Positions 5,790 to 27,156 of a DNA stretch of 64,000 bases are shown here, in pieces. The notes beneath the pieces are model-generated. The model was not told the origin of the DNA, searched no databases, and saw nothing but the letters and a program-made list of their open reading frames with translations. Source of the stretch: Vitrella brassicaformis CCMP3155 (Eukaryota; Protista; Chromerida); assembly GCA_001179505.1 (NCBI GenBank), contig CDMY01000420.1:1-64000 (forward strand), in the 5' to 3' direction. Both the position numbers and the translations under genes were made by a program. How positions within the stretch are numbered: position 1 is the first letter of the stretch; each line of letters begins with the position of its first letter.

Positions 5790-6679
5790 ATGGCGTCAAA
5801 AGGAAAGAGAACGGTGCGTGAAGCGAAGCGAGAGGCAGACGTGAACACAAGGCTCATTCATTCGTGCGCACTGTGGTGATATCTGTTGCTGCAGATTCAG
5901 TCTGTTGAAGACGCATTCGGCATATCGGATGACGAGGGCGACGAGGAGGAGATGCCCAGGGACGCCAAGAGGTCCAAGAACATCGGAGAACAGACAGCCA
6001 CAGCAAGTCAGGAACCGTCCAGGCGAATCCTCCCATCCCCGCTGCGTGCATGTGTCTGTCTGTGTGGGTGCAGGTGGACCGAAGACGTACGGCAAACTGG
6101 GAGGTACCTTCAGGGTTCAATGGCAAAGGTGAGTGAGATCCATTGGAGCTCTGTCTTCCTCTTCTTCTCAGCGGTGAATACGAATGTGTGACTGTCAGGC
6201 GGTCGCAGATGTACTTCAGCGAGCAGCAGGACCAGCAGGTCAAAGGGCTGCAGGAAACCGCTGGACACTCGAGTGTCCTCAGCGACAACCTCCCTCAGGA
6301 GCCCTCTGAACCGACCAGCTCCCGTCCTCTCCCCATGCCCGTCTCTGTGACCGGCCCACGGCGGAAAAATGTCCCTCTCTGGCAGCAGTGGAACACAGTC
6401 GACAGCGGGGACGCTGAGGCGGCTCCTGACTCGGGCGCTGCACAAGATAGCGGAGCGCCCAAGAAGTGGAGCATCTGCTATCTCTGTCAGCGGAAATTCA
6501 CCACATCAGAGATGCTGCGGAAGCACGAGGCGCTGTCTGAGTTGCACAAGAGGAACCTGGCTCTGAAGAAGATCGACAGAGAGAGGAGGGAAGAGGAGCT
6601 GGCGGCGGCCGAGGTGACAGCCCAGCCCAACGGCCCTAACCCTTATGCCAGGATTCTCAACCAGGAGGGTGGGGCATGA
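5790..6679 (+). CDS. Small C2H2 zinc-finger protein (RBM5/RBM10-type finger), 4 exons
   Basis: MASKGKRT|IQSVEDAFG... with phase-consistent GT-AG introns. Last exon has ICYLCQRKFTTSEMLRKHEALSELHKRNL, matching the CxxC..F..L..H..LS.LH..NL finger of RBM5/10-like proteins. Confidence 0.8.
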
Positions 6680-7135
6680 CGCACATGGATGGCCGAGCGC
6701 CTGCATTGCTATCTTCGTCTGTGACTGACTGGTGTTCTTGCGTGACTGCCGCATGAGTGGTAGAGTCGGCTGTCGGCTACATTCCCCTCATGAATAATGC
6801 TGTTGCGTGAGGGACCATCTCTCTTCTTCTGAGTCGTATCAGTGAAGCGTGCATGTCCTCACAGTGTCACACCTTCAAAACACGTGACTCCAGATGCTGC
6901 ATGCGAGTGGGGGCCCAAGCTCGCATGTTTCCGATCTGGCTGTGCCAAAAGTGGAGACAGCGCTGTCAGCGCCTCACATCTCATCAACAGTAGAGATTTG
7001 GAGGGCGAATAGGGCCTGGAGGCCACCTCTGCACTGGGGCGTCTTCGTTATCGCTCATCGGAGTTGTAGTGGCCCTTTCGGCCTCCAGCAGCATCGCCAG
7101 CCCGTCGGGCTTTCCATTACAGTGATCGCAGCGGC

Positions 7136-10100
7136 ATGCAGTGGCCATCCCGGTGGCTGCTGGGCGCCTTAATCGCCCTCTGCCTGAGCGCAGCTCTTGC
7201 GGACTTTGACGCGGATGAGGTGATTGGGCAGTGCCAGAAGGTCGTCAAGGAGGGCGGTGTGGCCTTCCGGTTCGAGTGTCCGGATTCCGTGTCAAGCATC
7301 AAGGTCAGGCTGTCGTCCGATGACACCGTCATCGACATCTACGGCAACCGGCAGCCGATGGAGTTCTCCCTCGCTGTTCCAGCAGTGCAGGGGGCGATGG
7401 TGCCGGTGTTCGCCTGCAAGGACCCTGCGGACAGAGACACCTGCACGGAGTACTTTATCATCGCGAGCACTCTGCCCGGCACCACGGCAGCTCTGCAGGA
7501 TCTGTCGGTGGCCGCTTCGGTGACGGCTCTCGAGCCGCCCTTCGACCCCGCCGTGTTTGAGTACAAGTGCACCATGTACTACGGCAAGACCACTCTCGTC
7601 GAAGCCAAGGCGTCCAACGGCGCCATGGTGTCGTTCCACGGCTATGACCAGTCCAGGAAGTACACCAGCCTCTATGAGTACACCCCGCCTCCCAGGGAAT
7701 CGCACCCCGTCCTGACGGCCTACGTGGTGTCGGAGTCGGGCAACGAGCGTGCCGAGTACCACATCACCATCGACATCATCCCATCCATCGACCCCACACT
7801 CGGCAGCATCACCTCCGACCCCCCCGGCAGCCTGTCGCCCAAGTTCTCGCCCCACCACAAGTCCTACCATCTCTTCCTGCCCTGGGGCTCCTCCTCTGCC
7901 ACCATCACCTTCACGCCGCGAGCTGACAGCACCATGCCCGTCAAGGTCAACGGCGAGGCTGCCAGTGGCGGCACGGCGTACGTCAAGGTGGACCCTGACA
8001 AGCCTCCCAAGACCCTGATCATCGAGACGCAGGCGCAGAACGGCGAGTACAAGGACAAGTACTATGTGACGGTGTCCAACCCCGTGGAGGCCAACACCTA
8101 CCTCGAGGAGCTGACTGTGTTCGGCGAGATGGGGCCCGTCCAGCTCAGCCGGGTCTTCGAAAGCACGAGGTGCGTGGGGCGGTGGGGCTGCCTGGGAAAG
8201 CGGCCGGGCATTCATCCATTGTGTTATGTGTGTGTCGTCAATCAGGTTGTCTGGGTACCAGGCTACGTTCCCGACGCCCAACAAGCTCTTCGCCATCAAG
8301 GCCATCCCACAGGACAAAGAAGCAACCGTCAGAGTCAAACGTACGCACAACACCACCCACATTGCTGCCGTCTCCGCTGCTATCGGCACTACGTCCCTCA
8401 TCTTTCTTCTTTGTGTGTGTGTTCCCTCATTCAGACGAGAAGCTGACGGATGAGGGCGAGATGATGTCGGGATACCACAAGCTGGACCTTGGCGAGGTGG
8501 ACACGGTGCGTGTGGAGGTGACGGCTTCTGACAACCTCCACGTCAGGACCTACTACGTCGACTGCTACAGGTGAGGAAGATCACGGAGGGAGAGAGGGTC
8601 GAGCGGGATGTCAGTGGGATTGTTGTGTCTGTGGCTGTGCAGGTTTGCATTGTGGTACCAGACAAAGAAGTTCACGGACACCCTGTCGATGATCGTGGCC
8701 TACACGGCATCCGCCATGTCCATCTTCTCGGGATCAGCCTTCCTTTCCACAGCCAAGTTCCTGCACGTGAGACCGACCACCTCCTGACACACTACAGACA
8801 GAACAAATGCTCGTGTCTCGTGTCTCATGTTTCCCACCTTCTCTCGCAGTTCCTCTCCCTGACGGCCTCCATGAACGGTGAGACGCCACTAAGACCGGCC
8901 GGCCACGTAGCCATCTGTCTCATGCTGTCCCTATCCTCCCTTGTTGCCTGCAGGCATCCCCGAGTCGTACATCGACTACACTGAGACCTTCAACAAGTTC
9001 AACTTGCAGTTTGCGCTGCCCCCCTGGATGGTGCGGCTGGTACACCAGGCCACCGGCGAGTCTCTCGAGGGCGGTGCCGAGACCGGCCAGGGTGTGTCCA
9101 GCGGCCAGCAGAACGAGCAGCGCATGAAGCAGAACCAGGCCGCCAACCAGGCTGCCAAGAATGGGACGCAGAAGTATGTCGGCATCAGTGAGAGGCGGGC
9201 CCTGCTGAGACACACACCGCCCACCACCGAGGCAGTCATCAAGGTGGAGGCCGCAGAGGATGTGGCAGATCCCTTCGACGTCCAGGGTCAGTACAGACAC
9301 AGAGAGAGACCCGTATGGTATGTCAAAGTGTCTTGTCTTCCATCAGGCTATGATGCTGCTGAGCTTCGCCGTCGGTTCAACGAGGAGGTGGACTACTTGA
9401 GCGACCAGACGGTCTTCTGGCCAGTGGGTCGGGTCTACGACGACATCAAATACGAGCCCGCCCTCGAGCCCGACCGATTCAGAGTCGTCGCCAGGAAGGT
9501 CCTCATGGACAAATGGACTCAAGTCGTCCAGGAGGTAGGACAGAGGGGGCGGCACACCCACACACCCACACACCCACACACCCACACCCACACATGTGTT
9601 CGTCCAGTACGAGCACAATCGTGAGCTGGGCAAGTACTCGAATGCCAATGGTACGATCTCGGAGGCGGCTCTGCCCGACCTCATTCTGCAGCTCAACGCC
9701 CACTCGGCAGCCATGAAGGCACGTGCCGCACGGAAGGTACGCACGGGACAAAAGTGACCGTACGACGGCCGACGGCTCACTCAGCCTTTGCCCACGCCGT
9801 GTGCATCAATCAGGCTGAGGAGGAGGCCGAGCGTCTGCAGAAGCAGCTCAAGTACGTGTGCAACCTGGTCATGGTGTCGGTCACGCTGCCGCTCATGTTC
9901 CTCGTCTACTACCTGTTCATCTGGCGGCCATTCATGCGCAAACCCGACGGCGCGCCTAACGACGCCGCATGGCAGGGTCAGTGAGCCAAACACACGTCTT
10001 TGTTGCAACAAAGACGCATTCGTTCATTGATTTGACTGACCATCCCGGTTTGCAGGTCTTCGCCCTTGGCCCGTGCTGCTGTTTGTGTTGGATTTCATGC

Positions 10101-13100
10101 TGGTTTCGTACGGGCAGGCGACGGCACAGATTCTGTTTGCCAAGGGGTCCGACACCATCAACGTGGCAGGTCTCGAGATCAAACCTGCCGCCCTCAGTGG
10201 CGTGGCTGGCGTGGGGCTGCTCATCTACCCTGTCGCCTACATCCTCTGGTCCGCATGGCTGCTCCTCAGACTCAGCAAGTACGAAACAAGGCCGATCTCT
10301 CTTGCTGCTGGCTGGATGGCTGACTGGACGGCTGGCTGCTGGCTGGCTGGATGGCTGGCTGGATGGCTGGCTGGGGGCTGGCTGGATGGTTTGGTGTGTG
10401 TGGTGGCGGTGTGTTCTTAGGGACGTGGTCTTCCAGGAGGAGATTCGGATGTATGTGGACCGCGAGGTGAAGTTCCTGCGGGCCTACTTCCCGCCGCCCA
10501 TCAACGACCCACTCAACATCATCAAGGGAATCTTCACAAAGTCAGTCGGGAAACCACACCATGCTGAGACGGACAGGGATGACATAACTAACACACGTCT
10601 GTCTGCCATGTGTGCTTGTCAGGGATATCCGCAATTTGGTGCCAATCACCAACGCCGCAGTCAAGGACACTGAGGACCCTGACGCCAAAAGGCTTAAGTT
10701 CGCTCAGGTAATGGGCTGTACTGGATGGGGAGAGACAGACACTTTCTTGGGCCATTCATGACGCGCCTCCTTCCTTATCCATCCATCCATCCATCCATCC
10801 AATCCTTAGGACACGTCGATTTTCAATTGGGTGGTGGTACGGATCTGCCCCAAGGGGCTGCGGGACCTGTGCGTCAACCCTGAAGACGTGGATGCGGAGG
10901 AGCTGCCCGAGATGAGGGAGAACAAGGGAGCGTCGCAGCCCCTGCTGAAGCAGGAGGGCATCGACCACGACAAGGAGAGGAACAAGTGGAAGAACATCAG
11001 GCTCGACTGGAACAAGAAACGAAGAGTCAGTGGGAAGCACACAGATGCACAGACAGACAGACACACCAACAGGAAGACGACATAACCCTCTCTTTCTTTT
11101 GTGTGTGACAGGAGCTGGGTGTCGACCTGGATGAGGAGGTTTTCCTCAGCGAGTGCATGAAGGAGCGCGGCCACCTCTTCAGAGAATACAAGACCGCCAA
11201 CGTCGGATGCAAGCGGTGAGGAACACCTGTGGCTAACTTGCCTTACTTACTACGATCCACTTTCTCCATCTGTCTGTCTGTCTGTCTGTGTGCTGCATGA
11301 AATACGTGCTTGCAGTTTGAACCTGCGCAACGCGTACGATCGCGAGATGGAGTTCCGTGTGGACATCCAACTGGGCCACCTGTACCCCCTCTCTACCGGC
11401 GGAGGCGACCTCACCTACTACGTGCCCGTCGACATGTACGTGTGTGATGGGAGGGGCAGGCAGCAACCAACACACACGGCGACGGACCGATAACATGTGT
11501 GTATCTGTGGGTTTGGGCTCCTGGTTGATGCAGGATGCAGATGGAGCACACCAACAAATACGGCCTCATGTTCGCCAAGTAGGTCAATTAAGGCAGTGGC
11601 GATCGCGGTGTAGCGTATGTCGCGCGTGTGATGTGTCTGTTGCAGGGCCCGTCAGGGTGCGTTTGGCTTCTTTGCGGTGACCCGGCTCAACATGCTTCTG
11701 GCCACCATCTTCATCTTCTCCTGGCACGACTCAGGTATGTGACACGATGGCCACCACCACCAGCAGCCACACACTGACTGCTGACTCCCTGTGTGTGTCC
11801 TGTCATTAGATGGGTTCGATCAGATCTTCATCTTCTGCCTGCTCAACATCATCATCACTCTCGCCCAGATCGTCCCTGCAGTCGAGAACGCCCGAGACGC
11901 CATGGAGAAAAACCATGATAAGGCGGTCAGAACCACGGACGCACATGCACCAGCACCAGCACAAATTGGTTCTTTCATGGTGTGTGGTGTCTCTCTCTCT
12001 CTCCCTGTGTCTGTGTTTGCAGCACAAATGGACGCGTGAGGGCAAGGAGCCCGGCGATTTCCTGTGCAAGTACAAGGCCGAGGAAGACAAAGAGGAGAAG
12101 TACTACTGGGTCAAGCAGGTCACATACAAACCCGACCAGACTGCATACTGCCAACCCAAAAAACTCAAATACTCGGTAATACTCCCACAAACAAACAGAA
12201 AAACTCCCCGTCTCCGAAATGTCTCTGCTTTCTCTTCAACGTGTATGTGTGTGTGGTCAGTTGGTGCCCTGTTTGGACGCCCACCGCGGCGAGCTGCAGC
12301 CGGACGGCAAAGTGAAGGAGATCACTGGCCCCGCCACGACCTATTCTGCCGAGGCGCTGCGCCGCACCTACGCCAAGATGGAGAACCTGCGGGCCTACCA
12401 GGTGGATCAGATCAAGAAGGAGCTCAAGGCCATCCGCGAGTTCGAGAAGAACAACCCGGAGATTCTGCTGCCCGAGTACCCTGGTGAGAAGACCGACGTG
12501 TCGTGCATGGCGATGACCAAGGTCAAGGCCATCGAGTTTGACAACATGTGCGACAACGACAGCTACTGCCAGGAGCCCAAGAAGATCCAGGAGGTGGGTG
12601 GGTGGGCAATGTCGACACCTGTGCATGTACTGGGTTGGCTGTGTGTCCCTGTGTCTCTGTGTGTGTGGCGGCGTGTCAGATGGTTGACAAGATCGACAAG
12701 CGCAACTATGAGTCGCTGCAAGACTGGGAGAAATTCACATTCAGATGCGGCAAAGCATGGGACAGGTAGATCATACAGACACACCCTCAGAGATGCATTG
12801 TCCAAGAAACCTTTTGTATGTGTGTGTGCAGTGTCTTCGACCGGCCGATGTTCAAGGGCTTCCCCGCGTGTCTGCTGCACGAGTTCTTTTGGGGGCCGGT
12901 CTTCACGGGCGTCCTCATGATCCTCACGCTCCTCTTCCTCCTCCTGGGTGAGCAACTCAGGAAAACCACTCACAGAGAGAGACACTGACCATCGGCCTCT
13001 CGCTTATTGTGTGAACGTTTGTTGTGTGTCAGCTCACCAGCGGATGATGACAGTTGACCCTCCTCTGGCCACCTTCTACTGCATCCTCACCACTGTCGCC

Positions 13101-16100
13101 GCCATGGTGGGTGGGGCAAGGGGCACTGACTAAGACACACACAGAGGACACAGGCGTGAGTCTTGGGCTGAGTCTCTGTCTGTCTGCGCGTGTGTGCGTG
13201 TGTGCAGATCATCATGAACTTCCAGGCAGCGTCGCATCAGCTGAAGGAGATCAAGGAGTACATGATCACTATCGTCCAGTCGGTGAGTGACGGACGGGGC
13301 ATGTGGGCGGGAGACTGACAGACAGTTCGGGTGTTTCTTCTCATGCGTGTGTGCAGGCCGACGACATCAAGGTCTTCATCTACGACCAGACTCAGCTCAT
13401 ATGGAAGTGGATGCTCTCCGCGTGGTAGACACGCCCTCACCCCCTACACACAGCCGAGAGACACCCATACAAGTCGTCCCTCCCTCCCTCCCTCCTTGTG
13501 TAGCTTTTTCCTGACGTGCAATGAGTGCGGTCGCCACGACCCCAGTGCCATCCCTGAGCCCGAGACGGCCAGCGTGACCATTCCGCTCGAGAACAAGGTC
13601 CGCAAGATCGGCCTGTACGTCAACGAACTCGGCATCTTCATGGAGGGAGAGGTAAGGCAATAAGAATCGTCCCTATTGCGCCGGCTTGCATCGGTGATCG
13701 TCTTGTCCGTGTGTCTGTGTCTGTGTCTGCAGTTGGAGTGGTCTGACGCGACCAAGGAGAAACTCGGACTCAAGACGAAACCCGACCGACTCCGGTGACC
13801 AAGATCACCTCAGGCCATGCCGGCTCTGTCTGCATGGACACGTGTTGTGTGCTCTCTGTGTGGTCAGTTACGAGATGTGCAAGTCAATGTCGGTGTGGGG
13901 CCGCGCGGTGCAGCGGACCAGATGGCGTGAGGTGCTGCCCATCCAGGTGCCGCTCGAGAAGTTCATCGAGAGCGACTCCATCACACAACTCGTCGCCACC
14001 ATCCATGTACTTATAAATGGAAGGGATCTACGGCCGGCCGGCAGACCAACAGGACCGTTCATTCATCGCCTTTGTTTGTTCCCCTCAGATTGTGAATCAC
14101 GACGATCGCACGTGCGAGAGCAACTACAAGGAGTACTCGTACCAGGATTCTGTTTTGTCGCTCTTCGCCGACAAGAAATTGACACCACCCCTGGGCAAAA
14201 TTGACCTCGGAACCCACGAGGTGAGACACACACAGAGAGAACGACCCCATAGTCTTTACTCCCTCTCGAACGCTGCCTGTGCGTGTTTGTGTGCAGGGTC
14301 AGCCCATCAAGCACTCGTTTTTGTTTTCAGCCGAGATGGAGGCCAAGGGCCTCTTCGCCCAAGTGTGGGAGGTCATCTCCACGTAGGCAATGCCAAGCCA
14401 TCATCACCCATGCATGCAAGAGGAAGAGAGACGGCCGTGTGTGTCTTCCTTCCGTGTGTGCAGGACGGTGCGTGACGTCTTGTGCCGCACGTGCAAGAAT
14501 TTGCAGGGCGAGGAGGTGCCTGAGCAGAGTGAGGACTGGATCCCCTGCTTCATCGTCAAGGCACTCTCAGAGTCCGAGGGAACTTACATCGTCCAACCCG
14601 AGTGAGCCACTTATCATGCGCATCTCGCTTCTCGTACGCGTGTTCGCGTGTGTGTGTGTGTGTGTGTGCAGTTTCGCCGCAATGGCCGAGCGTTACAAGA
14701 CGCGTTCATCCACCTTCAAACGCCTGACCACCAAAGCGTCCAGAGCTAGCCTGGTCAGCCATCCCATCCATGCCCACGCAAGACCCGCCATGTCTTTCTC
14801 CTGTGTGCTGTGCAGTCTGAGTCGATGTCGCCGTCCGATCTGCGCAAGGAGACGGAGGGGACGATCAACCTTAAGTCGCTGCCCACGGCTGACGACAAGG
14901 AGGGCAACACCAAACTCCTGGACCTCATCAAGAAACGAGCTGACTTCCTGGCCGCGGTGAGTGAGTGAGTGAAAATGGGGGCCTTCACATGAAACTGTTG
15001 GTGACTTGGTGACTGCAGGAGGAGAAGAAGTGGGAGATCTGGGCTGCCGCTGCGAAGAAGTGTCACGTCAGTCACAGCAGTATAACAAGTCCGGCCATTT
15101 CACTGCCCGGCCTTTTGTGTGTGCTGATGCAGGAGTTGAGTCAGCTGCCGACGATGAACGAGACCCACATGCAGACCCTCGAGCGCATCCTCGGCGAGGT
15201 CCGCGAGACCGTCAGGACAAAATTCGACGACCTCAAGAAGCCCAAGCGCGAGGAGGGTGGCGAGGGCGAGGAGCTGGCCGAGCCCATTGTGATATCGGAG
15301 ATCGAGTACCTGAAGCTGGACAAGTACCTCAAGTACGCATTCGAGACCCTCCAGCCCGACGAGAACAAGGAGATATACGATCGCATGCGGAAGGACAAAT
15401 TCATCCCCTTCAAAGTCCACATCAGCGACCTGCGCAAGGAGGTTAGCAAACAGACGCACTGACACACGCACACGCACCTTTCAAGCGCGGCACGCGTCAG
15501 TCAGCGCGGCTCACATCATGCTTGTCAGGGTAACCGTCAGAAGCAGATGGAGGCCTGGGAGGCCGAAGTGAAGGACTTCCTAGTGGTAAGCGACGAAGAC
15601 TAGCAAGAGCAGAGAGCGAAAATATGGTCATGTGTGCTCGTGTATTTAGAACGAGGTGGGCGCGTCTCTGTCTACGAGCGACGGCGTGTTGGATGCCAAG
15701 GGGCGGCCCAAGAGCCGATACGCGGCCGTCAAGGACCTCATCATGGAGCGGGTCAGGAGCCGCGGCAAGGGCACACACGAACTGACATTGATTCATCCAC
15801 TGTCGCTTGCTTGATGTGTCTCTCGGTCAGCTTGAGGAAGTGGTGAATCGGCCGGAGAACCAGACGATGAAGCAGTTCAAGTGCTCCCTGCACTTCGTCG
15901 CCGACGCCAGGGACATCCGCCGACGCAAGCGAGGTGAGCATACACACACATATAGATGCCTTACACATTCACTCTGCATCGTGTCAGTCCGTCAACCTTT
16001 TCTTATACATTTGTCTGTGGTTGATTCGATTCTGCGCAGAGTTGCCCGCTCGTTGGGGTCCCGACCCGCTTCTGCCCCACCAGGGCGCCGTGGCCCTCTA

Positions 16101-19100
16101 CGAATTCGACAAAAGGAGCGGCAAACCACTCCTCGACAATCCCACCTGGTTCATCTGCATGTTGCAGGTACTCACAGGTGTCGCTCTACGCAACACATCT
16201 ATCATGCACGTCTCTGTCTGTCTGTCTGCCTGTCTGTGCAGTTTTCGGCCACGCACGTGAAGGTGATGATCCCCAACCCTGTCACCATGATCGGAGTCAT
16301 CGACACGAAAACCGGCAAGGTCAGCCACCACTCACACATGGATGGGTGAATGCAGTGGGGATATCATCCATCCATCCATGTATTTGCTGGGCATCCATCA
16401 GGAGCTCAAGCACTATGCTGACGAGGACAAGGCTGACCGGCCAGATGACAATGGAAGAAAGCAGCGTTTCATCAAGAGGTACACACATGCACACACACAC
16501 GCATTCCTGGTGTCTGCTCATGGCGTCTCCGTCCTGTCTTATTTCCTCCTCTTCCTCCACAACCTACTGTGTGCAGGAAGATCCTCCACATCCGTTTGCG
16601 TCGTTTCGGCCTCTTGGGAGCCATTGGCGCAGGCAAGGCCAAGCAGAACAAAGGTGAGCACCGGACATTTAGCCCAGCAGCACACGTCACGCCTGCCATG
16701 GCGCCCATTTCTTTGCCTGTGTGTGTGACCAGTTGCTGACAATAGCACTGCCATCAAATCGCACCAGATGCTGCTGGATGAGATGGACCACTGGCTCTAC
16801 CTCATCAAAGCCGATGAGACCAAGGAAGACGTACGTTACCTGAATACACACACAGGGACACACAGGGAGACGGGGAGGGGATGCGCCTTGTGCAGCAAAT
16901 CGACTGGTATGACGAGGAGGGCGATGGAGAGGACAGCGCCAGAGGCAAGGGAGCATCCAAGATGCGAGACGGACAGAAGTCCAACCAGGTAAACACACAC
17001 AGACGCATCACATCGCCGGCTGCACCCGTGCTTTGTACGGGTGTGTCGGTGTCTGCGCCAGATCATGTTGCGCGACAGCCGTAATAACGCTGAGTTGGAG
17101 TACGATTTCCTCTTCAAGGAGACAGAGTTGGACGCCAAAAAGTTCCGCGAGACGCGGGAGCCCGAGACCGACCCCTACACCAAACACCTCATGATGCTGC
17201 GCATGACGGGCGACAAATACGCCCTCTGGGAGACACTGATCAAGGCCGCACACATGCACAAACCCGACGAATTCATCCACGGGTCAGTGAACTACACACT
17301 TCTCCTCTTCACCTCTCTCAATACACTCGACGGCTCTCTCTCCGTGTGTGTGTATTCTCTTGTATGGCTGCAGTTACCAGGGTCGCGTGATCGGTCACCC
17401 CAACCCCAGGAAGGCCGACATCTACCTCAGACATGACAAGGACGCCACACAGGTAAGAGATGCACGCGGCCGCTGACCGCAATGGCAGCACTGTGCACCT
17501 GTGCGTGAGTATACAGGTCTACTACGAGTACCAAGAGGGCAAGGACATCATCGCTGACGAGAGCAGGATGCTCGGCAAGTACGCAATCATACACACACAC
17601 ACACACGCACCCACATGGCCCCACTGCCGTTGATGTGTGTGGCCGGCATGTGTGTGCACATGTGTGTGCAGGTACGTGGGTGCGTTCAGCCACCATCGCT
17701 ACCACGGCAGGGGCATACTCATGGACCGTGACGAAAGCCCCCTGTATGAGGTAGGTGTGTGTGGATAACGCCACAATGAACACACAGAGAGAGACACGGC
17801 ACATGTCTTTGGTTGGCTCTCGTTCAGGGCGAGTGGGCCAATGGCAAGCGTTGGGGCAAGGGCATCTTCGTCTTCCGTGATGCGGTAAAGTCGCACATCT
17901 CGGTCCCCGTCGGTTGATTGGTGTGTCATGGTATTTCTATCTACCAGCGTGGGTTGCCCCGTGAGTACCGTGGTGAATTCTCGAACGACCAGATGTGCGG
18001 CAAGGGCCAGCTCCGCATCATCAACGTCGACGACCCCGCCAGGAAGCTCAGGGGACAGGCAGACGAGAAGCTCATCATCGACCAATACAAGGTAGCCAGG
18101 GATGTGTAAGATGCGGGCGTATTGAGTTGATGCATGTGTGTGTGTTTATGTGTTGGGTCGATCAATCAGGGCAAGTTCGCCCCGGCTGAGCCTGGTTTTG
18201 AGGCTGGTTTGCCCAAGCCGCGTGATGCGTCGCTGCCCGATGAGTTGGAGGACGAGGTGGCTTTGAAGGCCGAGGAGGACCGCAGGCGGGCACTGGCCAA
18301 GGCACGTAAGGACGAGGACGCTCTCGTGGAACTCAGCCCCGCTTCAGCCAGGACACTCGGCGCTAGGTGAGAAAATGGCACGCCATGACAGAGAAGCGGG
18401 GAGTCTGCGTGTCTTGACTATCCCTGTCCGTTTGTGTGTGCAGGACTGACGCTGATTTGCAGATCGCATACGTGATGACTAAGGAGGGCATGGACGAGTG
18501 GCTGCCGCACAAGGAGAAATGGAGACCCATGCACGAAAACTTCCAAAACAGCTGCACCGACACCGAAGCCACCATCCGGTACCCACCCACCTCCCTCACG
18601 CAATTCACACAATCCCGCATCTCTCCTTTCACTCTTCATCAGTTTCCTTGACGGTTCCGCCTATGACGGCCCCGTGCAAAACGGTGTGCCCGACACGACC
18701 GTGGCGACCCAGGTGCGCGGGCAGGCCGCGAAGGGCACGTTTGTGTGCCAGCACCCCGAGTACGGGTTCCGCTACGAGGGTGGGTGGAAGGACTTCAAGC
18801 CCCACGGCTACGGCGAGCTGGTACGCAAGGTCAAGGTGGGCACCCAGACGGCCGACCTCCGCTACAAGGGGGAGTTCAAGGACGGACTCAGACACGGCAA
18901 GGGCGTGCTGGAGATCGGACAGCTCGCGGACGGCGGCAAGACATTCAGGAGCCCTGTGCTCTTCGACATCAAGGGGGAGTGGCAGGTGGGTCGATGGGTT
19001 TAGGAGGTGGTGTGGAGAAGGAAGGATGCATCAAACACGTCCATCCATGCATCCTGCACCGTATATGGCGTGCAGAACGATTTGTTGGAGTGCCGGGAGG

Positions 19101-20771
19101 CCAGGATCACGATCGCACCATCCATGGAACAGACATTCCCATTCAAGTAAGATGCCAACCGACGCACACACACCCACAGAGAGACCCCCACTCCTCCCGT
19201 CGTATCGTGTTGCGTGTGTGTGTCAGATCGTACGTAGGCCCGTGCAGCCGCGGCATGATTGGCAACGACCGGGACAGCGGCACCATGGTGTTCTTCGATG
19301 ACAAGACGTACAAGGGCCCCTTCAGCAAGGGACTCAGACACACTGCCGAGGGACAGGAGGGCGAACTCACGGACAAGAACGGAACCAAGATCTACAAAGG
19401 AAAGGTCAGAGACGGACACACGGACACACAGACAGACAGAGAGGGAGGGAGGGAGGGAGGGAACGTGTGTGTATCAAGTTACCGATTCTTTTGTGGTTGA
19501 CGCAGTGGGAGAAGGACATTCCTGCTGCTGGCGATGTGTCGTCGCTGGACTGTGGCGACGGATACACATACACCGGGCCACTGCTCAACGGAAAGAGGAG
19601 CGGTGCAAAGGGTAAGTAAGCACACACCACACAGACAGACAGACAGACACATTCACTCATTCGTCCATTCCATGCATCATCGATGTCAGGCGAGTTGTTC
19701 AAGGGCAGCGAGAGGATCTACGAGGGCGCGTGGAAGGACGACCTGCCGGACGGAAAGGGAAAACTCTTCCTCAGTACACATGACACAACACACTACCAAC
19801 ACACAAACACTCTGTTAACGGCCGCGTCCGTCCGCCTGGTGCTTGTGTGCAGAGGAGGGTGTGTACGACGGCAACTTCCAGGGTGGCAAGCGCCACGGCA
19901 CGGGCAAGTTCGTGTACAAGGATGGCAAGGTGGGCGACGGTGCCGCGGCCAAGTTCCAGAGCTCCCCTGCTGTCAAGGACAAGCTGGGCAAGCAGCGCTT
20001 CTACGATGGCGAGTGGAAGAACGACGTGCAGCACGGAGAGGGCACGTACCTTGACGAGTTTGGAAAGGAGGGCACCTACCGGTCAGTGCTCACCGCGGAG
20101 ACAGACACTGCCTCTCTCTGTCTCACTCTCCCTGTGTGTGCATATACTGTGTGCATATACTGTGTGCAGGCTGGACAACGGCAGCTTTGGCACCCCTGAC
20201 CAGAGAGCTGATGACTACTGCTGTGGCTTCTACCCCAGCTGCAAGGCGAGTACACCACGTGCATGAGCTCTTTCATATGTGCATACTGTCTTGTGTCTCC
20301 TCATCTCAGTGTGCATGTTGCGGCAAGAAGCTGCCCAGTGACTTCCTCCCTCACGCCCTGCCCAACACGCCCGTCAATCGGTACACACGCAACCATGCAA
20401 GCGCTGTATTGTGTGCATTTCCCTGTGCGTGTTGCTATCCACCCTTGCGCCAGCACGAGCAAGCCTTTGACGCCCACGAAGCCCGTTGACGACAAGGCAT
20501 CCTTCGAGGTGTTCGTGTCGTCCGGACAGGTCGACGGACAGCCCCTCTTCAAATACTACGAGGACGCCCCACTCGGTAAATCAAACACAGTGCTGCTCAA
20601 GGCAGAGACACACGGGGGGAGAGCATGGTCGACCTGTCTGTTGTTTGTTGATGTGCGGCGGCAGACGTGCGTGGCGTGTCGACAAGGCTGGCGGACGAAC
20701 ACCCCATTCTGGAGCTCAAGGAGACGACCAAGTCCTTCCACCTCACTGACAAGCAGCCACTCAAGGGATGA
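7136..20771 (+). CDS. Giant membrane protein: signal peptide, cadherin-like beta-sandwich repeats, ~8-9 TM bundle (TRP/PF06011-like), cytosolic region with PH-like helices, MORN repeats, Cys-rich tail (~60 exons, roughly 2,900 aa)
   Basis: Signal peptide MQWPSRWLLGALIALCLSAALA. Repeats LxxLxV..LxPxFxPxxxxY..V.AxxG...Y.I.V at 7480-8570. TM segments lie between 8650 and 13260. MORN-type YxGxWxxxxxHGxG repeats lie between 17670 and 20080. The splice junctions I traced from 8169 to ~17900 and from 20245 to the stop at 20769-20771 were all phase-consistent. Confidence 0.8.
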
Positions 20772-21587
20772 AGTGCCTAGACGCAGGGCCGTCCTTTCTC
20801 CCGGATCCACGCACCCATGTGCTTCATTATGTGGTTTCTTTCCATGCGAGCTGCCTGCCTGCCTGTCTGCCTGCCTGCCTTTGGTACAAGTGGTTGGCAA
20901 AGGGGAGGATTGATGGATGGAGCAGTGGGAGGGGGATGGATGGATGGCTGGATGGGTGGATGGCTGCTTTAGTGGATGGTGGATGGGTGCAGGTGTAGAG
21001 CTTCTTTCTTTGCCTGAGGACAAGACAGACGGTGACGAACACACCCTGATCGACTGACTGCCTGAGCGCAACAGACTCATGCACACACGATGCGCAGAAT
21101 GCACGCAGCGCTGCAGTTTTGAACGCAATCTATACACAAGTACAACGACAACAGAACGTGTCTCTCACAACCGTGCGATTACATCGCCTACATCTACACA
21201 TAATGCTTCCGCAGCAACGCGACTGTCCGTTGCACCTCCACACTGCTGCAAATGTCGGCATTGCAAACCTGCACCATTCAGCATCTCCGCCATTTGCATT
21301 TGGTGTGGATCGAGTGGAGACTCGCAGGTGGGTGGTAGTGGGTGGGTGGTGGGGCGAGTAGTGCCTGCACACACGGCGCTCAACGCATGAGATCTATGTG
21401 CGTCTGTCTGTGTGCGTGCATGAGCGTATAATGGGCTTCTTTTGGCGGTTTTCATGTTTGAGCTCGCAATTGCGAGCTTTGTGTTTCTGTCGTTCGTTCG
21501 TTCGTTCTTCCCGGTTTGAGTAATCTGCTTCAGCTCACTGCCTCTTAGTGAATCCAGCAGCGGCGCCCTTATCCAATTGCCGCCTCT

Positions 21588-24143
21588 GTGGCAAGTTCCG
21601 GCTCTCAGAGCCTCGAGGTCTCCCGTGACTCGCGTCGGCATCTATTTGGGATGCCTCCCCCCCGAGCGGCGGCCACCCGCGCCCGCCGGGCATCGCAGCC
21701 CATCCTTGTCCAGCGCCGGACCTCACACGCGCAGGACGACAGAGCCAATGCCCGAGCAACGTCGATGTCTGCCTGGTGCTGCTCACTGTTGAGGATACGG
21801 TGGCCTCCGTTTGCCCAAGATGCCAACAGGACGCCCAGTGAACAGAGCAGGATCAAGGTGGGCCAACATGCCACTTGATGATGAGCGCTCATCATCAAGT
21901 GTTGGTTTCGTGTCTTGTGTCGTGTGTTGTGGTCAGCGGGGAGCTCAGCATGAGGTGTTCCTGCAGAGGTCGTTTGTGATCGTGTGGACCTTTGCGCTTT
22001 TCTTCCTAGTCATGTTCGTCGCCGCGCATGTCTTCCTGCGTACGAAAGACTCACACACAAACGAGAGACAAACACCCACTCAGATGGCGGGCATGTTTTC
22101 CTCCCTCTCTCTGTTGGTCGGTTGGCTGTGTGATCAGAGAGTTACGTTGGCCCTGCGTTTTTTGAGGTACGTGAGTTGAGAGGCAGCGACTTTCTGAGGA
22201 GATGCCGGTGCCCACGATGGCCGTGTGTGTGTCAGTTTTTCCTCGGCACAAGTATCCTCTCGACCGGCCTCTGGGCCGTCTACAGGCGACGCACAAGAGA
22301 ACTGCAGCTATTCATCGCCTCGTGAGCGAATCGCGCACAAACCACCACCAACACCCACACACCCACACACACACACGTGCCTGAGTGTCCCAACTTGCCT
22401 TGTGCACTCATTCACCCTCCCCTCCCATGCAGTGGTTTCTTTAACGTGCTGCTGCTGACCCTGTGGGTGACGCGCGTGTCCCTCCCGTACGTCGTCGGTC
22501 ACCACTTCATCCCCACCGGCGACACGCCCACCTTCACAGCAGAGGGCGACGGGGGCAACTCCACGCACAGCCTGCCGGAGGAACCATCACACACTGCTGA
22601 ATGGTAGGTCACTCTCAAACAGACAGGGAGGGAGGGAGGGAGGGAGAGGGTGGGTGCATACGTGTCGTTCGTGTGTGTGTGTGTATGTCAGGTATAAGGT
22701 GCTGACGTTTGGTGTGGTCGCGAGCATCCTCTCGTCAGCCGCGCAGCTGCTCCTCATCCCTATCGCCTACTATCTCATGTATGGCACACAGGCCAAAGCT
22801 TTGATACAAAGTCGTGCACACGAGGGGCTGTTGTTCATCAGGCGGCGTGCTGTGTCGTGTCCTTATCCGCCGGATCTCGTCCTGTCGGCCGTCGACACCT
22901 CTCTCACAACTACACTAAATGTACGCGGAGCTGAAGGGCATAGGTGTGTGGAAGCCACCCCACTCCTGTGTGTGTGTGCGTGGTGTTGTGTGTTGTCTGT
23001 CTCGTGTAAAGGTCTCCCGTGACCCCCTGGACGAGTGGGAGGCGGGAGCCTTGTCGTCAGAAAACCCATTGCCGCCCAGAGATGTACGCGCAGCCACCGA
23101 CCCAACCACCCACACATGTACCCCTCATCACACTGTCTGTCTGTCTGTGTATTGATCGCATCAGGCCAGTCGTTGGTCGATTAGCGTCAGTGTGGCCAAC
23201 ACGGCGGTATCTCGGGAATGCGAAGACTTCATCGCTACGTACGAGAAATCCATTGACCAGGTAAGGTGTGCGGTGCATCTCGCCGTCCAGCACAGCACAG
23301 CACACACAAAGCACTGGCTGACGGTCGCGTCCATTTCCTCCCTCTCTGTTCTTTTTCTCCGTGCAGATCGTTGCGTCAGGGCACCTGCCCCGCTGCCAGG
23401 ACCGAGTGGAGGCCGTCACGGCCGCACGCAGCGGCCTGCTCTACCGATGGCAGAAGCCTCAGATCAAACCCTCCCGGGCATACACGCCCCCATCTCCCTC
23501 ACCCACACCACCCCCACCCCCACAACCACAACCACCACAAGTGCCCGCCGACACGCTGGAGGACGGCAAGCAGCCGTCGCCCCCCTCGGCCGCCCCGAGC
23601 GAACGTGATTCTGAGCGCGTGGTGCCGCGCATCCCCAGCATCCCCAGCGGGGGGATCACGAGCTTCGCCAGCATGTCCACCTTGTCGTGTCTGTCGGAAC
23701 ACGGCACCACCACGCACAAGGCGGCGTGTCAGGAGCCAGGCGGCTACCCCATCGCACGAGATGCCGTCCGCGACAAGACGGCCGGCAGTGTGGCCGACAA
23801 GTGCCCACACCCCCACCCCCAGGCACAGCCGCATCCACAGACGCCGTCTCCCCCCAGCGCACTCTCATCAGCCGTTCGAGCCACCATCTCGACCCCACGC
23901 ATGGCGACGGGGTGCGCGGCTGCCCGGCACACCCACACCAAGTCCCTGACGGACCTGCGGCTGCCGGTGGTGGAGCGGCACCACTCGCTCTCGTCCAGTG
24001 CGCCATGCACCTCCCTCCTGGGGTCGGCCGACGACACGCCTCCGCCGCTGCTGTTCGCGACGCCGCAGAAGGGCGTGGGTGCGGCGAGTGACGCCGGCAA
24101 TCGGGGACGCGGCAGCACCGCCACACAGCAGGTGGGAGGCTAG
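21588..24143 (+). CDS. Hypothetical four-TM membrane protein with long Pro/Ser-rich C-terminal tail
   Basis: Spliced exons give hydrophobic segments SFVIVWTFALFFLVMFVAAHVFL, FFLGTSILSTGLWAVY, LFIASGFFNVLLLTLWV and VLTFGVVASILSSAAQLLLIPIAYYLM. The last exon (23367-24143) is low complexity and ends at TAG just before the gap. Confidence 0.7.
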
Positions 24144-24155
24144 ATAGTGTGGTGT

Positions 24156-24455
24156 NNNNNNNNNNNNNNNNNNNNNNNNNNNNNNNNNNNNNNNNNNNNN
24201 NNNNNNNNNNNNNNNNNNNNNNNNNNNNNNNNNNNNNNNNNNNNNNNNNNNNNNNNNNNNNNNNNNNNNNNNNNNNNNNNNNNNNNNNNNNNNNNNNNNN
24301 NNNNNNNNNNNNNNNNNNNNNNNNNNNNNNNNNNNNNNNNNNNNNNNNNNNNNNNNNNNNNNNNNNNNNNNNNNNNNNNNNNNNNNNNNNNNNNNNNNNN
24401 NNNNNNNNNNNNNNNNNNNNNNNNNNNNNNNNNNNNNNNNNNNNNNNNNNNNNNN
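24156..24455. other. Assembly gap (300 N), followed by a G homopolymer at 24456-24491
   Basis: Direct observation. Confidence 0.99.
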
Positions 24456-24730: not shown

Positions 24731-27156
24731 AACGTGACGTGACGTGTGAGAGTGCATACACACACGTCTATCTATCTGTGTATATATATTATATACCGAG
24801 GGAGGGGAGTGGTCGACGGACGGACGGACCGACCGGGTGAGTGAGTGAACACATTTTATCTGTCTATATTGATGGATGGTTGGACTGACCGACGGACGAG
24901 TGATTGCCCTGTTGTTTTTCCGCACCATGTGTATGTATGGATGTGTGGTATCGTCGAGCACGGTGATCTATCGGAGAAGGGAGGGGAGGGGAGGACCTTT
25001 CAATCAATGACGGCCTGACCGACCGTATATATTGTGTACACAGCCAGGGAGGGAGGGGCGGAGGCGGTGTTGCTGCTGCTGCTGCTGCGTCTGCTGTCAC
25101 ACACACACCCACACCGGCGCCCATCCATCCATCCATCCATCCATGTGGTGCCTGTGGCCGCTTTCATGCTGTATGTGTGATGGATGTCACTCACCTGCTA
25201 CATACATACCGGCCAACTACACTACACTCTTCACTCTTCACTCTGCCATGTCTGTCATCCTTCGGGACGCACTCACTCTCACTCACTCTCACTCATACTT
25301 GCTAGAGAAATGCATACCTGCTCGCACAATCACCTACCTACTCGCAAGCTAACTGGGGGGTCTGGCTGTCTTCCTGCCTGTCTGTCTGTCTGTCTGTGTG
25401 CATGTGGATGAATGGCGGGATGGGATGCATTGCATTCATGTCACACACCCACTTGCTGCCAGTCGGTCTGCCGCGCACTCACTCACTGACAGGGAGGAGG
25501 AGCCCTACCGGTCTCCCCCCACCCCCCACCCGTCACTCGTCAGCCAGTCCGTCTGTCTGTCCGTCTGTCCGTGTGCGACCGTGCAAATCGCACTCCGACT
25601 ATCGCAATGCTCGTATGCCGTCCTGTCTTGTGTGTGTCGTCTTTCTGTCGCCCGTCGGTTGTGGTGGCGTCTCTCGTTGTGGTGCGTCGTCTTTGTTTAT
25701 GGAAGTGAGGGTGGTCAAGGAGAGAAAGGGGGGGGCTTGCAGATGGTTTTCTAGTTTGCCAGCCAAGTGTGTGTCTGTCGATGAAGTCGATCGGTCGATC
25801 TTACGCGCGGGGAGAGAGAGATATATATAGAGAGAAGAAAGGCTGATGTTGTCTCGTTGTCGTTACTCTTGGCCTGTGGTCGGGTACTGATGGTCGCAGG
25901 ACCACGACGGTCGCCTGACTACGAGGCCGATGGTCGTGTCGTGGTTGTGGCTGCTCTACCTGGCTAGATGGATGGATGGATGGATGGAGATCTCGATGGC
26001 CAATGGCCAAGTCTGCCTGCGTGCCTGCCTGCATGCCTGTCTGCCACTCATGGATAGCATGTGCTGTTATGTAATTGACGGCTGTAGCGTGGCTGTGTGT
26101 GTGTGTGTGTGTGTGTACCTTACGTACCACATTTGTGATCTCTCTCTCTCTCCCCCTTGTGTCTGAGGTCAGTATCTGTGCAACGAATCTGGGGCTGCTG
26201 GGTGTGGGTTGTGATGTGGCGTGATGTGCTGGATGGCCTTGCTGTGTGTCGATAATGCTGCGCATGACAATGACGCTCACTTTCTGGGGTGATTTTTACG
26301 GATATATACATACATACACACGATGAATGGACTCTCTCTACTCTGCGCCCTCATCCCCCGGCCCCGCCCCGCCTCCTTTTCTCCCGTGTGTGTGTGTCGA
26401 GAAATTTTGCCGTTCGTTGCATTCTTTCGCGGATCGATCGTTGTCCTGTCTGCCTGCTGATTTTGTGACGAGACGAGACGAGAGGGAGGGATTTTGCACT
26501 CACCAGCTGCCATGCCATGCCATGCCATGCCATGCCAGCATGGCATGCAAGTGCGGCGTCCATGTGTGTGTGTGTGTGTGTGTGTGTCTTGTGGTTGCGA
26601 GGGCTGCCTCCGGGCACGCGAGAGAGAGGCGGCGGACACTCACGTAATGATGTCAGAAGGGGAGAGTGTTGCCTTAGTCCACCTGTCTGTTTACTTGCTT
26701 TACCTACCTGCCTGCCTGCCTGCTATAGGTCCCTAAGATTTTTCTCTTTGCACACCTGCAATCGGTCTGTCTGTCTGTCTGGCTGTCTCTATGTCTGTCT
26801 GTCTGTCTGTCTGGATGGATGGATGCGTGGATTTTTCCTTTTTGGCCCGGCGGACTTGACTGACTTGGATTGTAGGATTTTTTCCTGGCTCGTCATGCTC
26901 TCACCTGGCTCGTCCCACTCTATCCTGGTTTTTCGCCCATTGGATGGCACGCCATGGCGTGATCATTACATCAGGGAGTTTTTAAAAGAAGGGATAATGA
27001 TCGGGCCATCCATCTGTATACCCCGTGCAAGTGCCTTTTAAGTGTCGATGGGGTGGATGGATGTTGGCAATGGGGGTGCCTGCCTGCCATGCGCCTCGAT
27101 CGACACGTCCAGATTGGATGGATGGATGGATGGATTGGCTTATCCATGGTGTGTGT

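What the first reader, a model, noticed from the sequence alone, without database searches (positions are those of the whole stretch)
7136..20771. One ~60-exon gene fuses a cadherin-like ectodomain, a multi-pass TM bundle and a cytosolic MORN array
Seen: a phase-consistent exon chain links a signal peptide, about three beta-sandwich repeats, about 8-9 hydrophobic helices, more than 1,000 aa of cytosolic sequence and many MORN repeats in one roughly 2,900-aa product. Established: MORN repeats act as protein/membrane-binding scaffolds (junctophilins; alveolate MORN1 at cytoskeleton and inner-membrane ends), and cadherin-like sandwiches are adhesive ectodomains. I do not recognise this combination from any named protein. 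Inference: an adhesion-receptor or channel-like protein that couples the cell surface to alveolar membranes or the cortical cytoskeleton (a membrane contact or sensory complex).
Basis: partly seen in the sequence, partly recalled or inferred. Interest (0 to 1): 0.8.

Follow-up and report, generated by a model that had tools for sequence, protein, structure and literature searches.

The report
Surface-to-cortex MORN membrane protein gene
This is one real 62-exon gene of the alga Vitrella brassicaformis, encoding a 2,903-residue membrane protein with cadherin-like repeats predicted outside the cell, a multi-helix membrane core and MORN repeats predicted inside; dinoflagellates have the same layout, but its function is untested.

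Summary
The window is the start of Vitrella brassicaformis contig CDMY01000420.1, and 7136-20771 is the annotated gene CEM11596.1 (UniProt A0A0G4FFF8, no curated name). My own exon chaining, a public 9.3-kb transcriptome ORF (2,903 aa) and spliced transcript contigs laid on 12801-18800 all agree. There are 62 exons and 61 short introns (60 GT-AG, one GC-AG). There is no break between the membrane part and the MORN part.

Order of modules:
- signal peptide
- an N-domain with four Cys (three invariant in all seven sequences)
- three PF12733 beta-sandwiches
- a conserved weak helix pair
- seven strong membrane helices, charge bias giving N-out/C-in, with a conserved acidic residue in TM3 and an Arg in TM5
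- about 860 aa of orphan cytosolic sequence
- MORN arrays of 3 plus about 11 repeats

The same collinear layout occurs in Gymnodinium smaydae, two further dinoflagellate-like transcripts and two near-identical contigs of one environmental transcript. The blastogregarine Siedleckia has only the ectodomain and membrane part.

Pfam, PDB sequence and profile searches, ESM Atlas and a literature search gave no named family. AlphaFold failed on both orphan regions.

A surface-to-cortex tether or receptor role is plausible but unproven. The scan had not noted this family before.

The parts
7136..20771 (+). Whole coding span: 62 exons, 61 introns of 60-142 nt (median 79), CDS 8,712 nt = 2,903 aa. The full exon list is in the full report.
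   Evidence: Public annotation gives the range 7136-20771. Transcript ORF P0151.
6958..7135 (+). Approximate 5' UTR. It is 178-192 nt if unspliced. This is inferred, not seen directly.
   Evidence: Constant offset of 178 nt between the X7 contig position and the model position.
7136..7204 (+). Signal peptide, aa 1-23. Hydrophobic core LLGALIALCLSAALA, then DFDAD.
   Evidence: Homologues also start with a hydrophobic segment.
7205..7465 (+). N-terminal domain, aa 24-110, with four Cys (C33, C48, C94, C103). All four are invariant in the five-sequence alignment A1. In the seven-sequence alignment A5, C48, C94 and C103 stay invariant and C33 does not.
   Evidence: Invariant columns in alignments A1 and A5.
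7466..8570 (+). Three PF12733 'cadherin-like' beta-sandwich repeats, aa 111-422. The third is split over exons 1-3.
   Evidence: Pfam results. Hand-read splice phases.
8671..8877 (+). Conserved, weakly hydrophobic helix pair, aa 432-470, in exons 4-5. It makes either zero or two membrane crossings.
   Evidence: The motif LKxLQFxALT is in the consensus.
8954..9852 (+). Loop 1, aa 471-702. It is charged, has no Cys and has two NGT sequons. Predicted outside.
9853..10273 (+). TM2-TM4, aa 703-816, in exons 9-10. An acidic residue in TM3 is conserved in 7 of 7 sequences, YP in TM4 in 6 of 7, and a basic cluster follows TM4.
10274..11649 (+). Loop 2, aa 817-1049. Predicted cytosolic. It is 230 aa here and about 450 aa in the dinoflagellate forms.
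11650..11886 (+). TM5-TM6, aa 1050-1103, in exons 17-18. An Arg in TM5 is conserved in the 5 sequences checked.
11887..12862 (+). Loop 3, aa 1104-1317. This K/E-rich insertion is absent from the dinoflagellate homologues.
12863..13225 (+). TM7-TM8, aa 1318-1376, in exons 22-24.
   Evidence: The introns here are confirmed by spliced contigs.
13226..17573 (+). Orphan cytosolic region, aa 1377-2236. Conserved blocks lie at about 13538-14300 (motif TIHxVNH...DSxLSL...PxGxD) and about 15436-16266 (motif W..EV...LH.V...W.PD.L).
   Evidence: Alignments A3 and A4. No Pfam or PDB match.
17574..18034 (+). MORN cluster 1, three repeats, aa 2237-2312.
18035..18679 (+). Charged linker between the two MORN clusters, aa 2313-2454. 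Its charged heptad-like stretches suggest a coiled coil; this was judged by eye and not tested.
18680..20070 (+). MORN cluster 2, about 11 repeats of which 5 are canonical, aa 2455-2775.
20071..20771 (+). C-terminal tail, aa 2776-2903, with a Cys cluster (CC..C.C.CC) at about 20216-20330. The stop codon is 20769-20771.
20246..20309 (+). The single GC-AG intron. The other 60 introns are GT-AG.
   Evidence: The junction peptide SCK|CACC is present in the transcript ORF P0151.

Best explanation
Shown: 7136-20771 is a single expressed gene of Vitrella brassicaformis (CEM11596.1). It encodes a 2,903-aa multi-pass membrane protein. The order of modules is conserved in dinoflagellate-type homologues: signal peptide, Cys-containing N-domain, three PF12733 beta-sandwiches, membrane core, orphan cytosolic modules, and split MORN arrays (3 plus about 11).

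Inferred from charge bias: the seven strong helices run N-out/C-in. The beta-sandwich part therefore faces outside (or a lumen), and loops 2 and 3 and the 1,500-aa tail face the cytosol.

Inferred from what MORN domains do elsewhere: the protein sits in the plasma membrane and displays a binding ectodomain. Its MORN arrays act as an extended cytosolic platform that binds a cortical partner. In these organisms that partner is most plausibly the outer alveolar membrane or its protein skeleton. On this reading the protein marks or holds a surface-to-cortex contact, with polarity opposite to junctophilin.

The conserved buried acidic (TM3) and basic (TM5) residues suggest the membrane core does more than anchor. 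It may have a sensing or conducting role. Nothing tested here shows which.

My confidence in the gene structure and architecture is about 0.97. The confidence given below is for the functional reading.
For: One gene:
- Spliced 9-kb contigs with a constant offset to the model.
- All 62 exon translations are found consecutively in transcript ORF P0151.
- The public annotation gives the same range.

Architecture:
- Pfam finds PF12733 and MORN only.
- MORN matches to solved MORN1, junctophilin and radial-spoke chains.

Conservation of the fusion:
- P0099, P0152/P0155, P0154 (Gymnodinium smaydae) and the L004/L005 ORFs (2,364-2,553 aa) all carry PF12733 at the N-terminus and MORN at the C-terminus.
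- They align collinearly with the Vitrella protein at 21-23% identity.

Extracellular N-terminus:
- Signal peptide.
- Conserved Cys in the N-domain: four invariant in A1, three of them still invariant in A5.
- A Thr/Ser/Pro-rich stalk in the dinoflagellate forms.

Topology: basic flanks in the TM2-3 loop, after TM4 (RLRRAGRLVWS) and after TM8, and acidic flanks before TM2 and between TM5 and TM6.

Buried charges: D/E in TM3 in 7 of 7 sequences, and Arg in TM5 in 5 of 5.

Established knowledge: junctophilin MORN arrays form a platform that binds a plasma-membrane channel peptide (PMC8916002, from its abstract).
Against: - There is no localisation, binding or physiology data for any member.
- MORN repeats are not reliably lipid binders and often mediate protein-protein contacts or dimerisation (PMC7725318). 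A link to the alveolar membrane is therefore a guess.
- MORN is fused to many unrelated partners in this genome (other notes of the scan, not checked by me). Its presence alone says little.
- The Siedleckia sequence (1,382 aa) lacks the tail. This may be real or an assembly truncation.
- Topology rests on hydropathy and charge counts only. AlphaFold models were unusable.
- The ectodomain type is best known from bacterial surface proteins of unknown ligand.
Confidence: 0.4

Rival explanations
1. Receptor-operated channel or transporter. The seven-helix core is the working part, such as an ion or solute path or a voltage or ligand sensor. The ectodomain gates it, and the MORN tail only positions or regulates it.
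For: - Conserved acidic residue in mid-TM3 in 7 of 7 sequences and Arg in TM5 in 5 of 5.
- The membrane core is retained in every homologue, including Siedleckia, which lacks the tail.
- There is precedent for MORN fused to a 7-TM ion-channel fold in trypanosomes (PMC9998090).
- A weak ESM Atlas lead to a TRP-like cluster, score 0.76.
Against: - No Pfam, PDB or profile match to any channel or transporter family.
- The Atlas score is in the range that shuffled sequences reach.
- No pore-loop or selectivity motif was recognised.
- One acidic and one basic residue may simply pair to hold helices together.
Confidence: 0.25
2. Organelle-membrane protein rather than a plasma-membrane protein. The beta-sandwich part faces the lumen of a secretory or cortical organelle such as a trichocyst or other extrusome, the alveolus itself, the pusule or the flagellar membrane. 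The MORN tail docks that organelle to the cortex or cytoskeleton.
For: - A signal peptide only shows entry into the secretory pathway.
- MORN proteins in solved structures are frequent in flagellar and cortical assemblies: radial spokes, FAP proteins, MORN1.
- The family occurs in lineages rich in extrusomes and alveoli.
Against: - No sorting motif was identified.
- The mucin-like Thr/Ser/Pro stalk of the dinoflagellate forms is more typical of surface-exposed proteins.
- Nothing distinguishes the two locations computationally.
Confidence: 0.25
3. Artefact: two or more neighbouring genes, a membrane-protein gene and a MORN gene, merged by gene prediction or by read-through assembly.
For: - A forced exon chain always yields some chain.
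- The tool warns that a contig across two genes does not prove one transcript.
- MORN genes are abundant and shuffled in this genome.
Against: - Between 12801 and 18800 the pieces of the spliced contigs are separated only by short skips (the 14 listed are GT..AG, 62-101 nt), no unspliced intergenic stretch is retained, and the frame is continuous.
- The 2,903-aa ORF is uninterrupted in an independent transcriptome assembly.
- Five other sequences from other organisms keep the same fusion as single intron-free ORFs.
Confidence: 0.02

Closest known systems
Junctophilins (animal ER/SR-plasma membrane tethers)
   Same: Both have a split MORN array (6+2 in junctophilin, 3 plus about 11 here) separated by a joining region. 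Both combine it with a long helical or low-complexity spacer and a membrane anchor. The inferred job, holding two membranes or a membrane and a cortex at a fixed distance, is also shared.
   Different: The polarity is reversed. Here the anchor is N-terminal, multi-pass and carries a large ectodomain, and the MORN repeats are C-terminal. Junctophilin has N-terminal MORN repeats and one C-terminal tail anchor in the ER. Outside the MORN repeats there is no sequence similarity.
Alveolate MORN1 and other soluble MORN scaffolds
   Same: The best PDB matches of the MORN part are Toxoplasma, Plasmodium and Trypanosoma MORN1 (E 4e-16 to 2e-14). MORN1 is a cortical, IMC-associated scaffold.
   Different: MORN1 is a small soluble protein made only of repeats. 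This protein is a 2,903-aa integral membrane protein with 2,200 aa of non-MORN sequence.
Trypanosomatid GRL1 (MORN + 7TMIC) proteins, PMC9998090
   Same: MORN repeats are fused in one chain to a seven-helix membrane domain in a protist.
   Different: In those proteins MORN is N-terminal and the 7TMIC fold is N-in/C-out at the C-terminus, with no ectodomain. Here the charge bias gives N-out/C-in, the helices are spaced 3+2+2 (3+4 in dinoflagellates) with 230-450-aa loops, and MORN is C-terminal. The fold could not be compared because AlphaFold failed.
Bacterial PF12733 'cadherin-like beta sandwich' surface proteins (T9SS-sorted, autotransporter-linked)
   Same: The three ectodomain repeats match this family. 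The nearest non-family hits are bacterial, at 25-37% identity.
   Different: The bacterial proteins carry 5-28 repeats and bacterial sorting domains. They have no eukaryotic signal peptide, membrane core or MORN repeats.
Adhesion GPCRs and polycystin-1-type receptors
   Same: Both have a large repeat-built ectodomain, then a multi-helix core with N-out/C-in orientation, then a long cytosolic tail.
   Different: There is no GAIN/GPS, 7tm_2, PLAT or PKD_channel match. The loop lengths are unlike a GPCR.

Membership tests
MORN-repeat proteins (PF02493) | Tandem repeats of about 23 aa with the motif YxGxWxxGxxxGxG | tested here: met
   Pfam E 3e-27 with 4-5 stretches. There are 7 canonical and about 7 degenerate repeats by motif. 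The profile hits solved MORN1 and junctophilin chains.
PF12733 cadherin-like beta-sandwich domain proteins | Match to PF12733 above the gathering score | tested here: met
   62.9 bits against a cut-off of 24.2. Met in all homologues.
Classical cadherins | PF00028 cadherin repeats | tested here: not met
   No PF00028 hit at E<=0.1 in any member. Ca2+-binding linker motifs were not examined separately.
Junctophilin | N-terminal 6+2 MORN repeats, an alpha-helical spacer and a single C-terminal tail anchor | tested here: not met
   The domain order is reversed and the anchor is multi-pass. Junctophilin chains match only through the MORN repeats.
Adhesion GPCR | GAIN/GPS domain next to a 7tm_2 core | tested here: not met
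   No such Pfam hits. The helices are separated by loops of 230-450 aa.
7TMIC (insect Or/Gr-like, including trypanosome MORN-GRL1) | Seven helices, N-in/C-out, with the Orco-like fold | tested here: inconclusive
   Charge bias favours the opposite orientation. The fold comparison was not possible because the model had pLDDT 37.6.
Polycystin / TRP-type channels | PKD_channel or TRP pore domain. Polycystin-1 also has a PLAT domain. | tested here: not met
   No Pfam or PDB match. The Atlas lead to PF06011 scored only 0.76.
Apicomplexan CRMPs (multi-pass proteins with ectodomains) | EGF, Kringle or GCC2_GCC3 ectodomain modules with a CRMP 9-TM core | tested here: inconclusive
   No such Pfam modules were found.

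The most novel reading that the evidence does not exclude
This is an ancestral myzozoan 'inverse junctophilin'. It would be a plasma-membrane multi-pass protein whose MORN arrays reach across the narrow gap to the alveoli, and so a physical coupler between the cell surface and the alveolar sacs. Its charged membrane core would transmit an external binding event to the cortex. On this reading it was lost or truncated on the way to core Apicomplexa.
Probability: 0.15. Interest if true: 0.75.

Novelty: new variant of a known kind. Interest (0 to 1): 0.45.

Why it matters
Alveolates keep flattened membrane sacs tightly apposed to the plasma membrane. The components that hold and couple the two membranes are only partly known outside a few apicomplexan models. 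This protein family is conserved between a chromerid and dinoflagellates. Its predicted topology joins an exposed binding domain, a membrane core with conserved buried charges, and a long MORN platform on the cytosolic side. That makes it a concrete candidate for such coupling, and it can be tagged to test the idea.

It also shows that about 1,800 residues of this protein (the membrane core and the central modules) belong to no described family. That marks a gap in fold and family coverage for these lineages.

If instead it proves to be an ordinary organelle membrane protein, the value is limited to a corrected gene model and a newly delimited orphan family.

Tried and rejected
- AlphaFold2 on the membrane region (aa 415-1470, 5-sequence alignment) gave mean pLDDT 37.6. 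On the central region (aa 1400-2300) it gave 39.2. Only the MORN end was confident. I ran no fold search, because matches to such models are meaningless.
- A word-based search of the core (aa 423-2240) found only the protein itself.
- A search with the full-length alignment A1 was swamped by bacterial PF12733 proteins and did not even return the known dinoflagellate members. It therefore says nothing about absence elsewhere.
- PDB sequence and profile searches of the core gave nothing apart from MORN matches.
- ESM Atlas gave scores of 0.76-0.81, which is chance level.
- Exon-by-exon Pfam scans of the core gave only sub-threshold noise such as Fuz_longin, Spt20 and DUF7635.
- Literature searches by accession number and by domain words found no paper on this protein.
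- Rfam, tRNA, and promoter/terminator scans of the locus were empty.
- MAFFT aligns the membrane helices poorly between Vitrella and the dinoflagellates. In A5, TM5 is misplaced, so the invariance of the TM5 Arg rests on A2 and on inspection of the motif.
- I considered a 9-TM model in which helix 432-455 is a true first crossing and 1400-1420 a last one. I ranked it lower because it would put the basic TM2-3 loop and the basic post-TM4 flank outside.
Full report
**Source and public annotation**

The window is 58% G+C eukaryotic DNA. A search with exon 1 alone returned a 100% identical 2,888-aa protein, P0001. The cluster look-up names it CEM11596.1 / UniProt A0A0G4FFF8 of Vitrella brassicaformis CCMP3155, 'unnamed protein product', with the automatic name 'Cadherin-like beta-sandwich-like domain-containing protein'. 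The public annotation places the gene at 7136-20771 of contig CDMY01000420.1 (GCA_001179505.1). The locus is therefore annotated but uncharacterised. No paper in the library mentions its accession numbers.

**Gene model**

I read the first four exons by hand. They are 7136-8169, 8246-8340, 8435-8570 and 8643-8766, with 72-94-nt GT-AG introns and consistent phases.

A simple exon chainer of my own used codon log-odds and splice scores and was anchored at ATG 7136. It gave 58 exons. After retraining on confirmed introns it gave 62 exons, ending at the stop at 20771.

59 of my 62 exon translations occur verbatim in P0001. The three differences resolve as follows.
- For exon 13 (10810-11025) the transcriptome ORF P0151 (2,903 aa, from a 9,273-nt MMETSP transcript contig) supports my acceptor. 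The public model uses one 45 nt downstream.

With those corrections, all 62 exon translations are found consecutively in P0151, each exon compared on its own. The CDS is 8,712 nt. There are 61 introns of 60-142 nt, median 79.

Exons:
7136-8169; 8246-8340; 8435-8570; 8643-8766; 8850-8877; 8954-9286; 9347-9534; 9608-9736; 9814-9976; 10056-10278; 10421-10540; 10623-10707; 10810-11025; 11112-11215; 11316-11435; 11534-11578; 11646-11734; 11810-11925; 12023-12175; 12261-12593; 12680-12765; 12832-12947; 13033-13106; 13208-13282; 13357-13424; 13504-13651; 13733-13794; 13868-14006; 14089-14220; 14297-14382; 14464-14601; 14672-14753; 14816-14956; 15019-15066; 15133-15441; 15529-15585; 15650-15751; 15831-15933; 16040-16167; 16242-16319; 16402-16478; 16577-16653; 16733-16830; 16896-16988; 17062-17282; 17374-17452; 17517-17578; 17672-17750; 17828-17884; 17948-18091; 18170-18366; 18444-18578; 18643-18985; 19076-19146; 19227-19404; 19506-19611; 19690-19773; 19853-20081; 20170-20245; 20310-20380; 20454-20575; 20665-20771.

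Only one lay of 6,000 letters was allowed. I put it on 12801-18800, which runs from the last membrane helices to the first MORN exons.

- Two runs each hold one long spliced contig with no mismatches: X7, 8,998 nt, and X1, 9,275 nt.
- Of the 15 joints listed, 14 are GT..AG skips of 62-101 nt carried by these contigs. The other, 13206 to 13477 (GA..CG, 270 nt, shorter side only 23 letters), comes from a different X7 contig at a repeated intronic stretch and is unrelated.
- Fifteen further joints were not listed. The offset between contig position and my spliced-model position is a constant 178 nt across all eight listed pieces. The whole 3,230-nt stretch of the model therefore agrees with the contig, unlisted joints included.
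- The contig lengths fit the full CDS plus UTRs. The 5' UTR is about 178-192 nt. The 3' UTR is about 108 nt in X7 and about 371 nt in X1, using the corrected CDS.
- The runs are only guessed to be RNA. However, intron-less contigs cannot come from genomic DNA of this locus, and run X6 of the same sample holds the unspliced form.

No polyA site or new start lies between the two halves.

**Architecture**

Pfam on the full public protein finds only PF12733 and MORN. The parts in order are:

- Signal peptide, aa 1-23.
- N-domain, aa 24-110, with four Cys. All four are invariant in the five-sequence alignment. In the seven-sequence alignment C33 is no longer invariant.
- Three PF12733 sandwiches, aa 111-422.
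- A conserved but weakly hydrophobic helix pair, aa 432-470.
- Seven strongly hydrophobic helices at about 703-727, 745-770, 790-816, 1050-1073, 1079-1103, 1318-1345 and 1356-1376.
- About 860 aa with no match to anything.
- Three MORN repeats, a 140-aa charged linker, and about eleven more MORN repeats.
- A tail with a Cys cluster.

**Topology**

In the three dinoflagellate-type homologues:
- the TM2-TM3 loop and the flank before TM3 are basic;
- the flank after TM4 is strongly basic (RLRRAGRLVWS, KR 4-5, DE 0-1);
- the flank after TM8 is basic;
- the stretch before TM2 is acidic.

In Vitrella the TM5-TM6 turn is acidic.

By the positive-inside rule (established knowledge), the seven strong helices run N-out/C-in. 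This puts loops 2 and 3 and the whole tail in the cytosol, as MORN repeats require. The weak helix pair must then cross either not at all or twice.

This is inference only. AlphaFold gave unusable models for both orphan regions.

**Relatives**

Among the best 150 of 728 hits to exon 1, nearly all are bacterial multi-repeat PF12733 proteins. Only P0099 and P0134 resemble the N-terminus as a whole. Following them gave these sequences:

| Sequence | Length | Source |
|---|---|---|
| P0099 | 2,364 aa | Intron-free transcript contig (Logan assembly of ERR14988470) |
| P0152 / P0155 | 2,415 aa | Logan and MMETSP transcript contigs |
| P0153 / P0154 | 1,802 / 2,451 aa | Gymnodinium smaydae (EukProt) |
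| P0134 | 1,382 aa | Blastogregarine Siedleckia nematoides |

The Logan contig encoding P0152 begins with GCTCAAG, the 3' end of the dinoflagellate spliced leader as I recall it.

A metagenome scan with the central conserved block added two near-identical contigs of one environmental transcript with 2,547- and 2,553-aa ORFs, and one fragment.

All full-length members carry PF12733 at the N-terminus and MORN at the C-terminus. They align collinearly with the Vitrella protein at 21-23% identity, and with each other at 37-53%.

Conserved landmarks:
- an acidic residue in TM3 (7 of 7);
- YP in TM4 (6 of 7);
- an Arg in TM5 (5 of 5 examined);
- central motifs TIHxVNH...DSxLSL...PxGxD and W.PD.L.

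The Vitrella loop 3 (aa 1104-1317) and much of its central region are lineage-specific insertions. Siedleckia has the ectodomain and membrane core only. I cannot tell whether that is real or a truncated assembly.

The fusion of ectodomain, membrane core and MORN tail therefore predates the split of chromerids and dinoflagellates.

**Function**

Nothing here tests function. My preferred reading is about 0.4 likely. In it, the protein is a surface-exposed receptor-like protein, and its MORN arrays dock to the cortex (alveoli or their skeleton).

This reading rests on three things:
- the predicted topology;
- the role of MORN platforms in junctophilin (PMC8916002, PMC8934682) and in cortical MORN1 (PMC4501334 text; PDB matches);
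- the conservation of the fusion.

Two points are against over-reading it:
- MORN repeats were re-evaluated as protein-binding or dimerising modules rather than general lipid binders (PMC7725318).
- Other notes of this scan report MORN fused to many partners in Vitrella (not checked by me).

The buried conserved charges keep a channel, transporter or sensor role open (about 0.25). An organelle location is equally open (about 0.25). A merged gene model is excluded for practical purposes.

**Comparison with known families**

The protein is a member of the MORN-repeat and PF12733 domain families. It is not a cadherin, junctophilin, adhesion GPCR or polycystin, by the tests listed in the membership table.

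The trypanosome MORN+7TMIC proteins (PMC9998090) are the nearest precedent for MORN fused to a seven-helix domain. They have the opposite order and, by charge bias, the opposite orientation.

**Limits**

- Absence from Chromera, ciliates and core Apicomplexa is not established. The one exhaustive search used only the ectodomain exon, and the word searches are insensitive at this divergence.
- Exons upstream of 12801 and downstream of 18800 are supported by the transcriptome ORF and by the contig-length arithmetic. They are not supported by laid reads.
- Exons were searched by reference, and full-length work used the public proteins that the search returned.

Noticed in passing
window 20246-20309: This is the only non-GT intron of the gene. 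It is a GC-AG intron (gcgagt...ctcag), deduced from the junction peptide in the transcript ORF.
   Followed up: yes
window 10810-10854: The public gene model (2,888 aa) starts exon 13 45 nt further downstream than the transcriptome ORF (2,903 aa). This is either an annotation slip or an alternative acceptor that removes 15 aa from cytosolic loop 2.
   Followed up: partly
window 10303-10389 and 20934-20979: There are GCTGGCTGGATG-type tandem repeats in the longest intron (142 nt) and again just past the 3' end of the gene. They create spurious Trp/Gly/Leu-rich open frames.
   Followed up: no
window 13172-13207, 13477-13499, 16847, 18151: Many unrelated contigs in all four runs join or break at these intronic spots, and they share loose-end sequences between runs. 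These are probably short repeated intronic elements dispersed in the genome or transcriptome.
   Followed up: no
run X2 (organism B), window 17966-18214: A 171-nt spliced piece identical to the Vitrella transcript appears at depth 4 in a run labelled as another organism of the same study. This is most likely sample carry-over, not a homologue.
   Followed up: no
L003:1-7: The transcript contig encoding homologue P0152 begins with GCTCAAG.
   Followed up: partly
proteins P0002-P0150: Outside this family the PF12733 repeats are closest to bacterial surface proteins, mostly Bacteroidota T9SS-sorted and autotransporter-linked, at 25-37% identity. An ancient bacterial origin of the ectodomain module is possible but was not tested.
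   Followed up: no
window 5790-6679 (+), 21765-24143 (+), 24156-24455: The flanking annotated genes are a 223-aa PCNP-like protein upstream and a 530-aa protein without a family downstream. A 300-N assembly gap follows the latter.
   Followed up: no
window 27148-27272 and about 38.6 kb: Other first-stage notes describe a pair of hairpins of about 100-120 nt, 11.4 kb apart. They lie outside this gene and I did not examine them.
   Followed up: no
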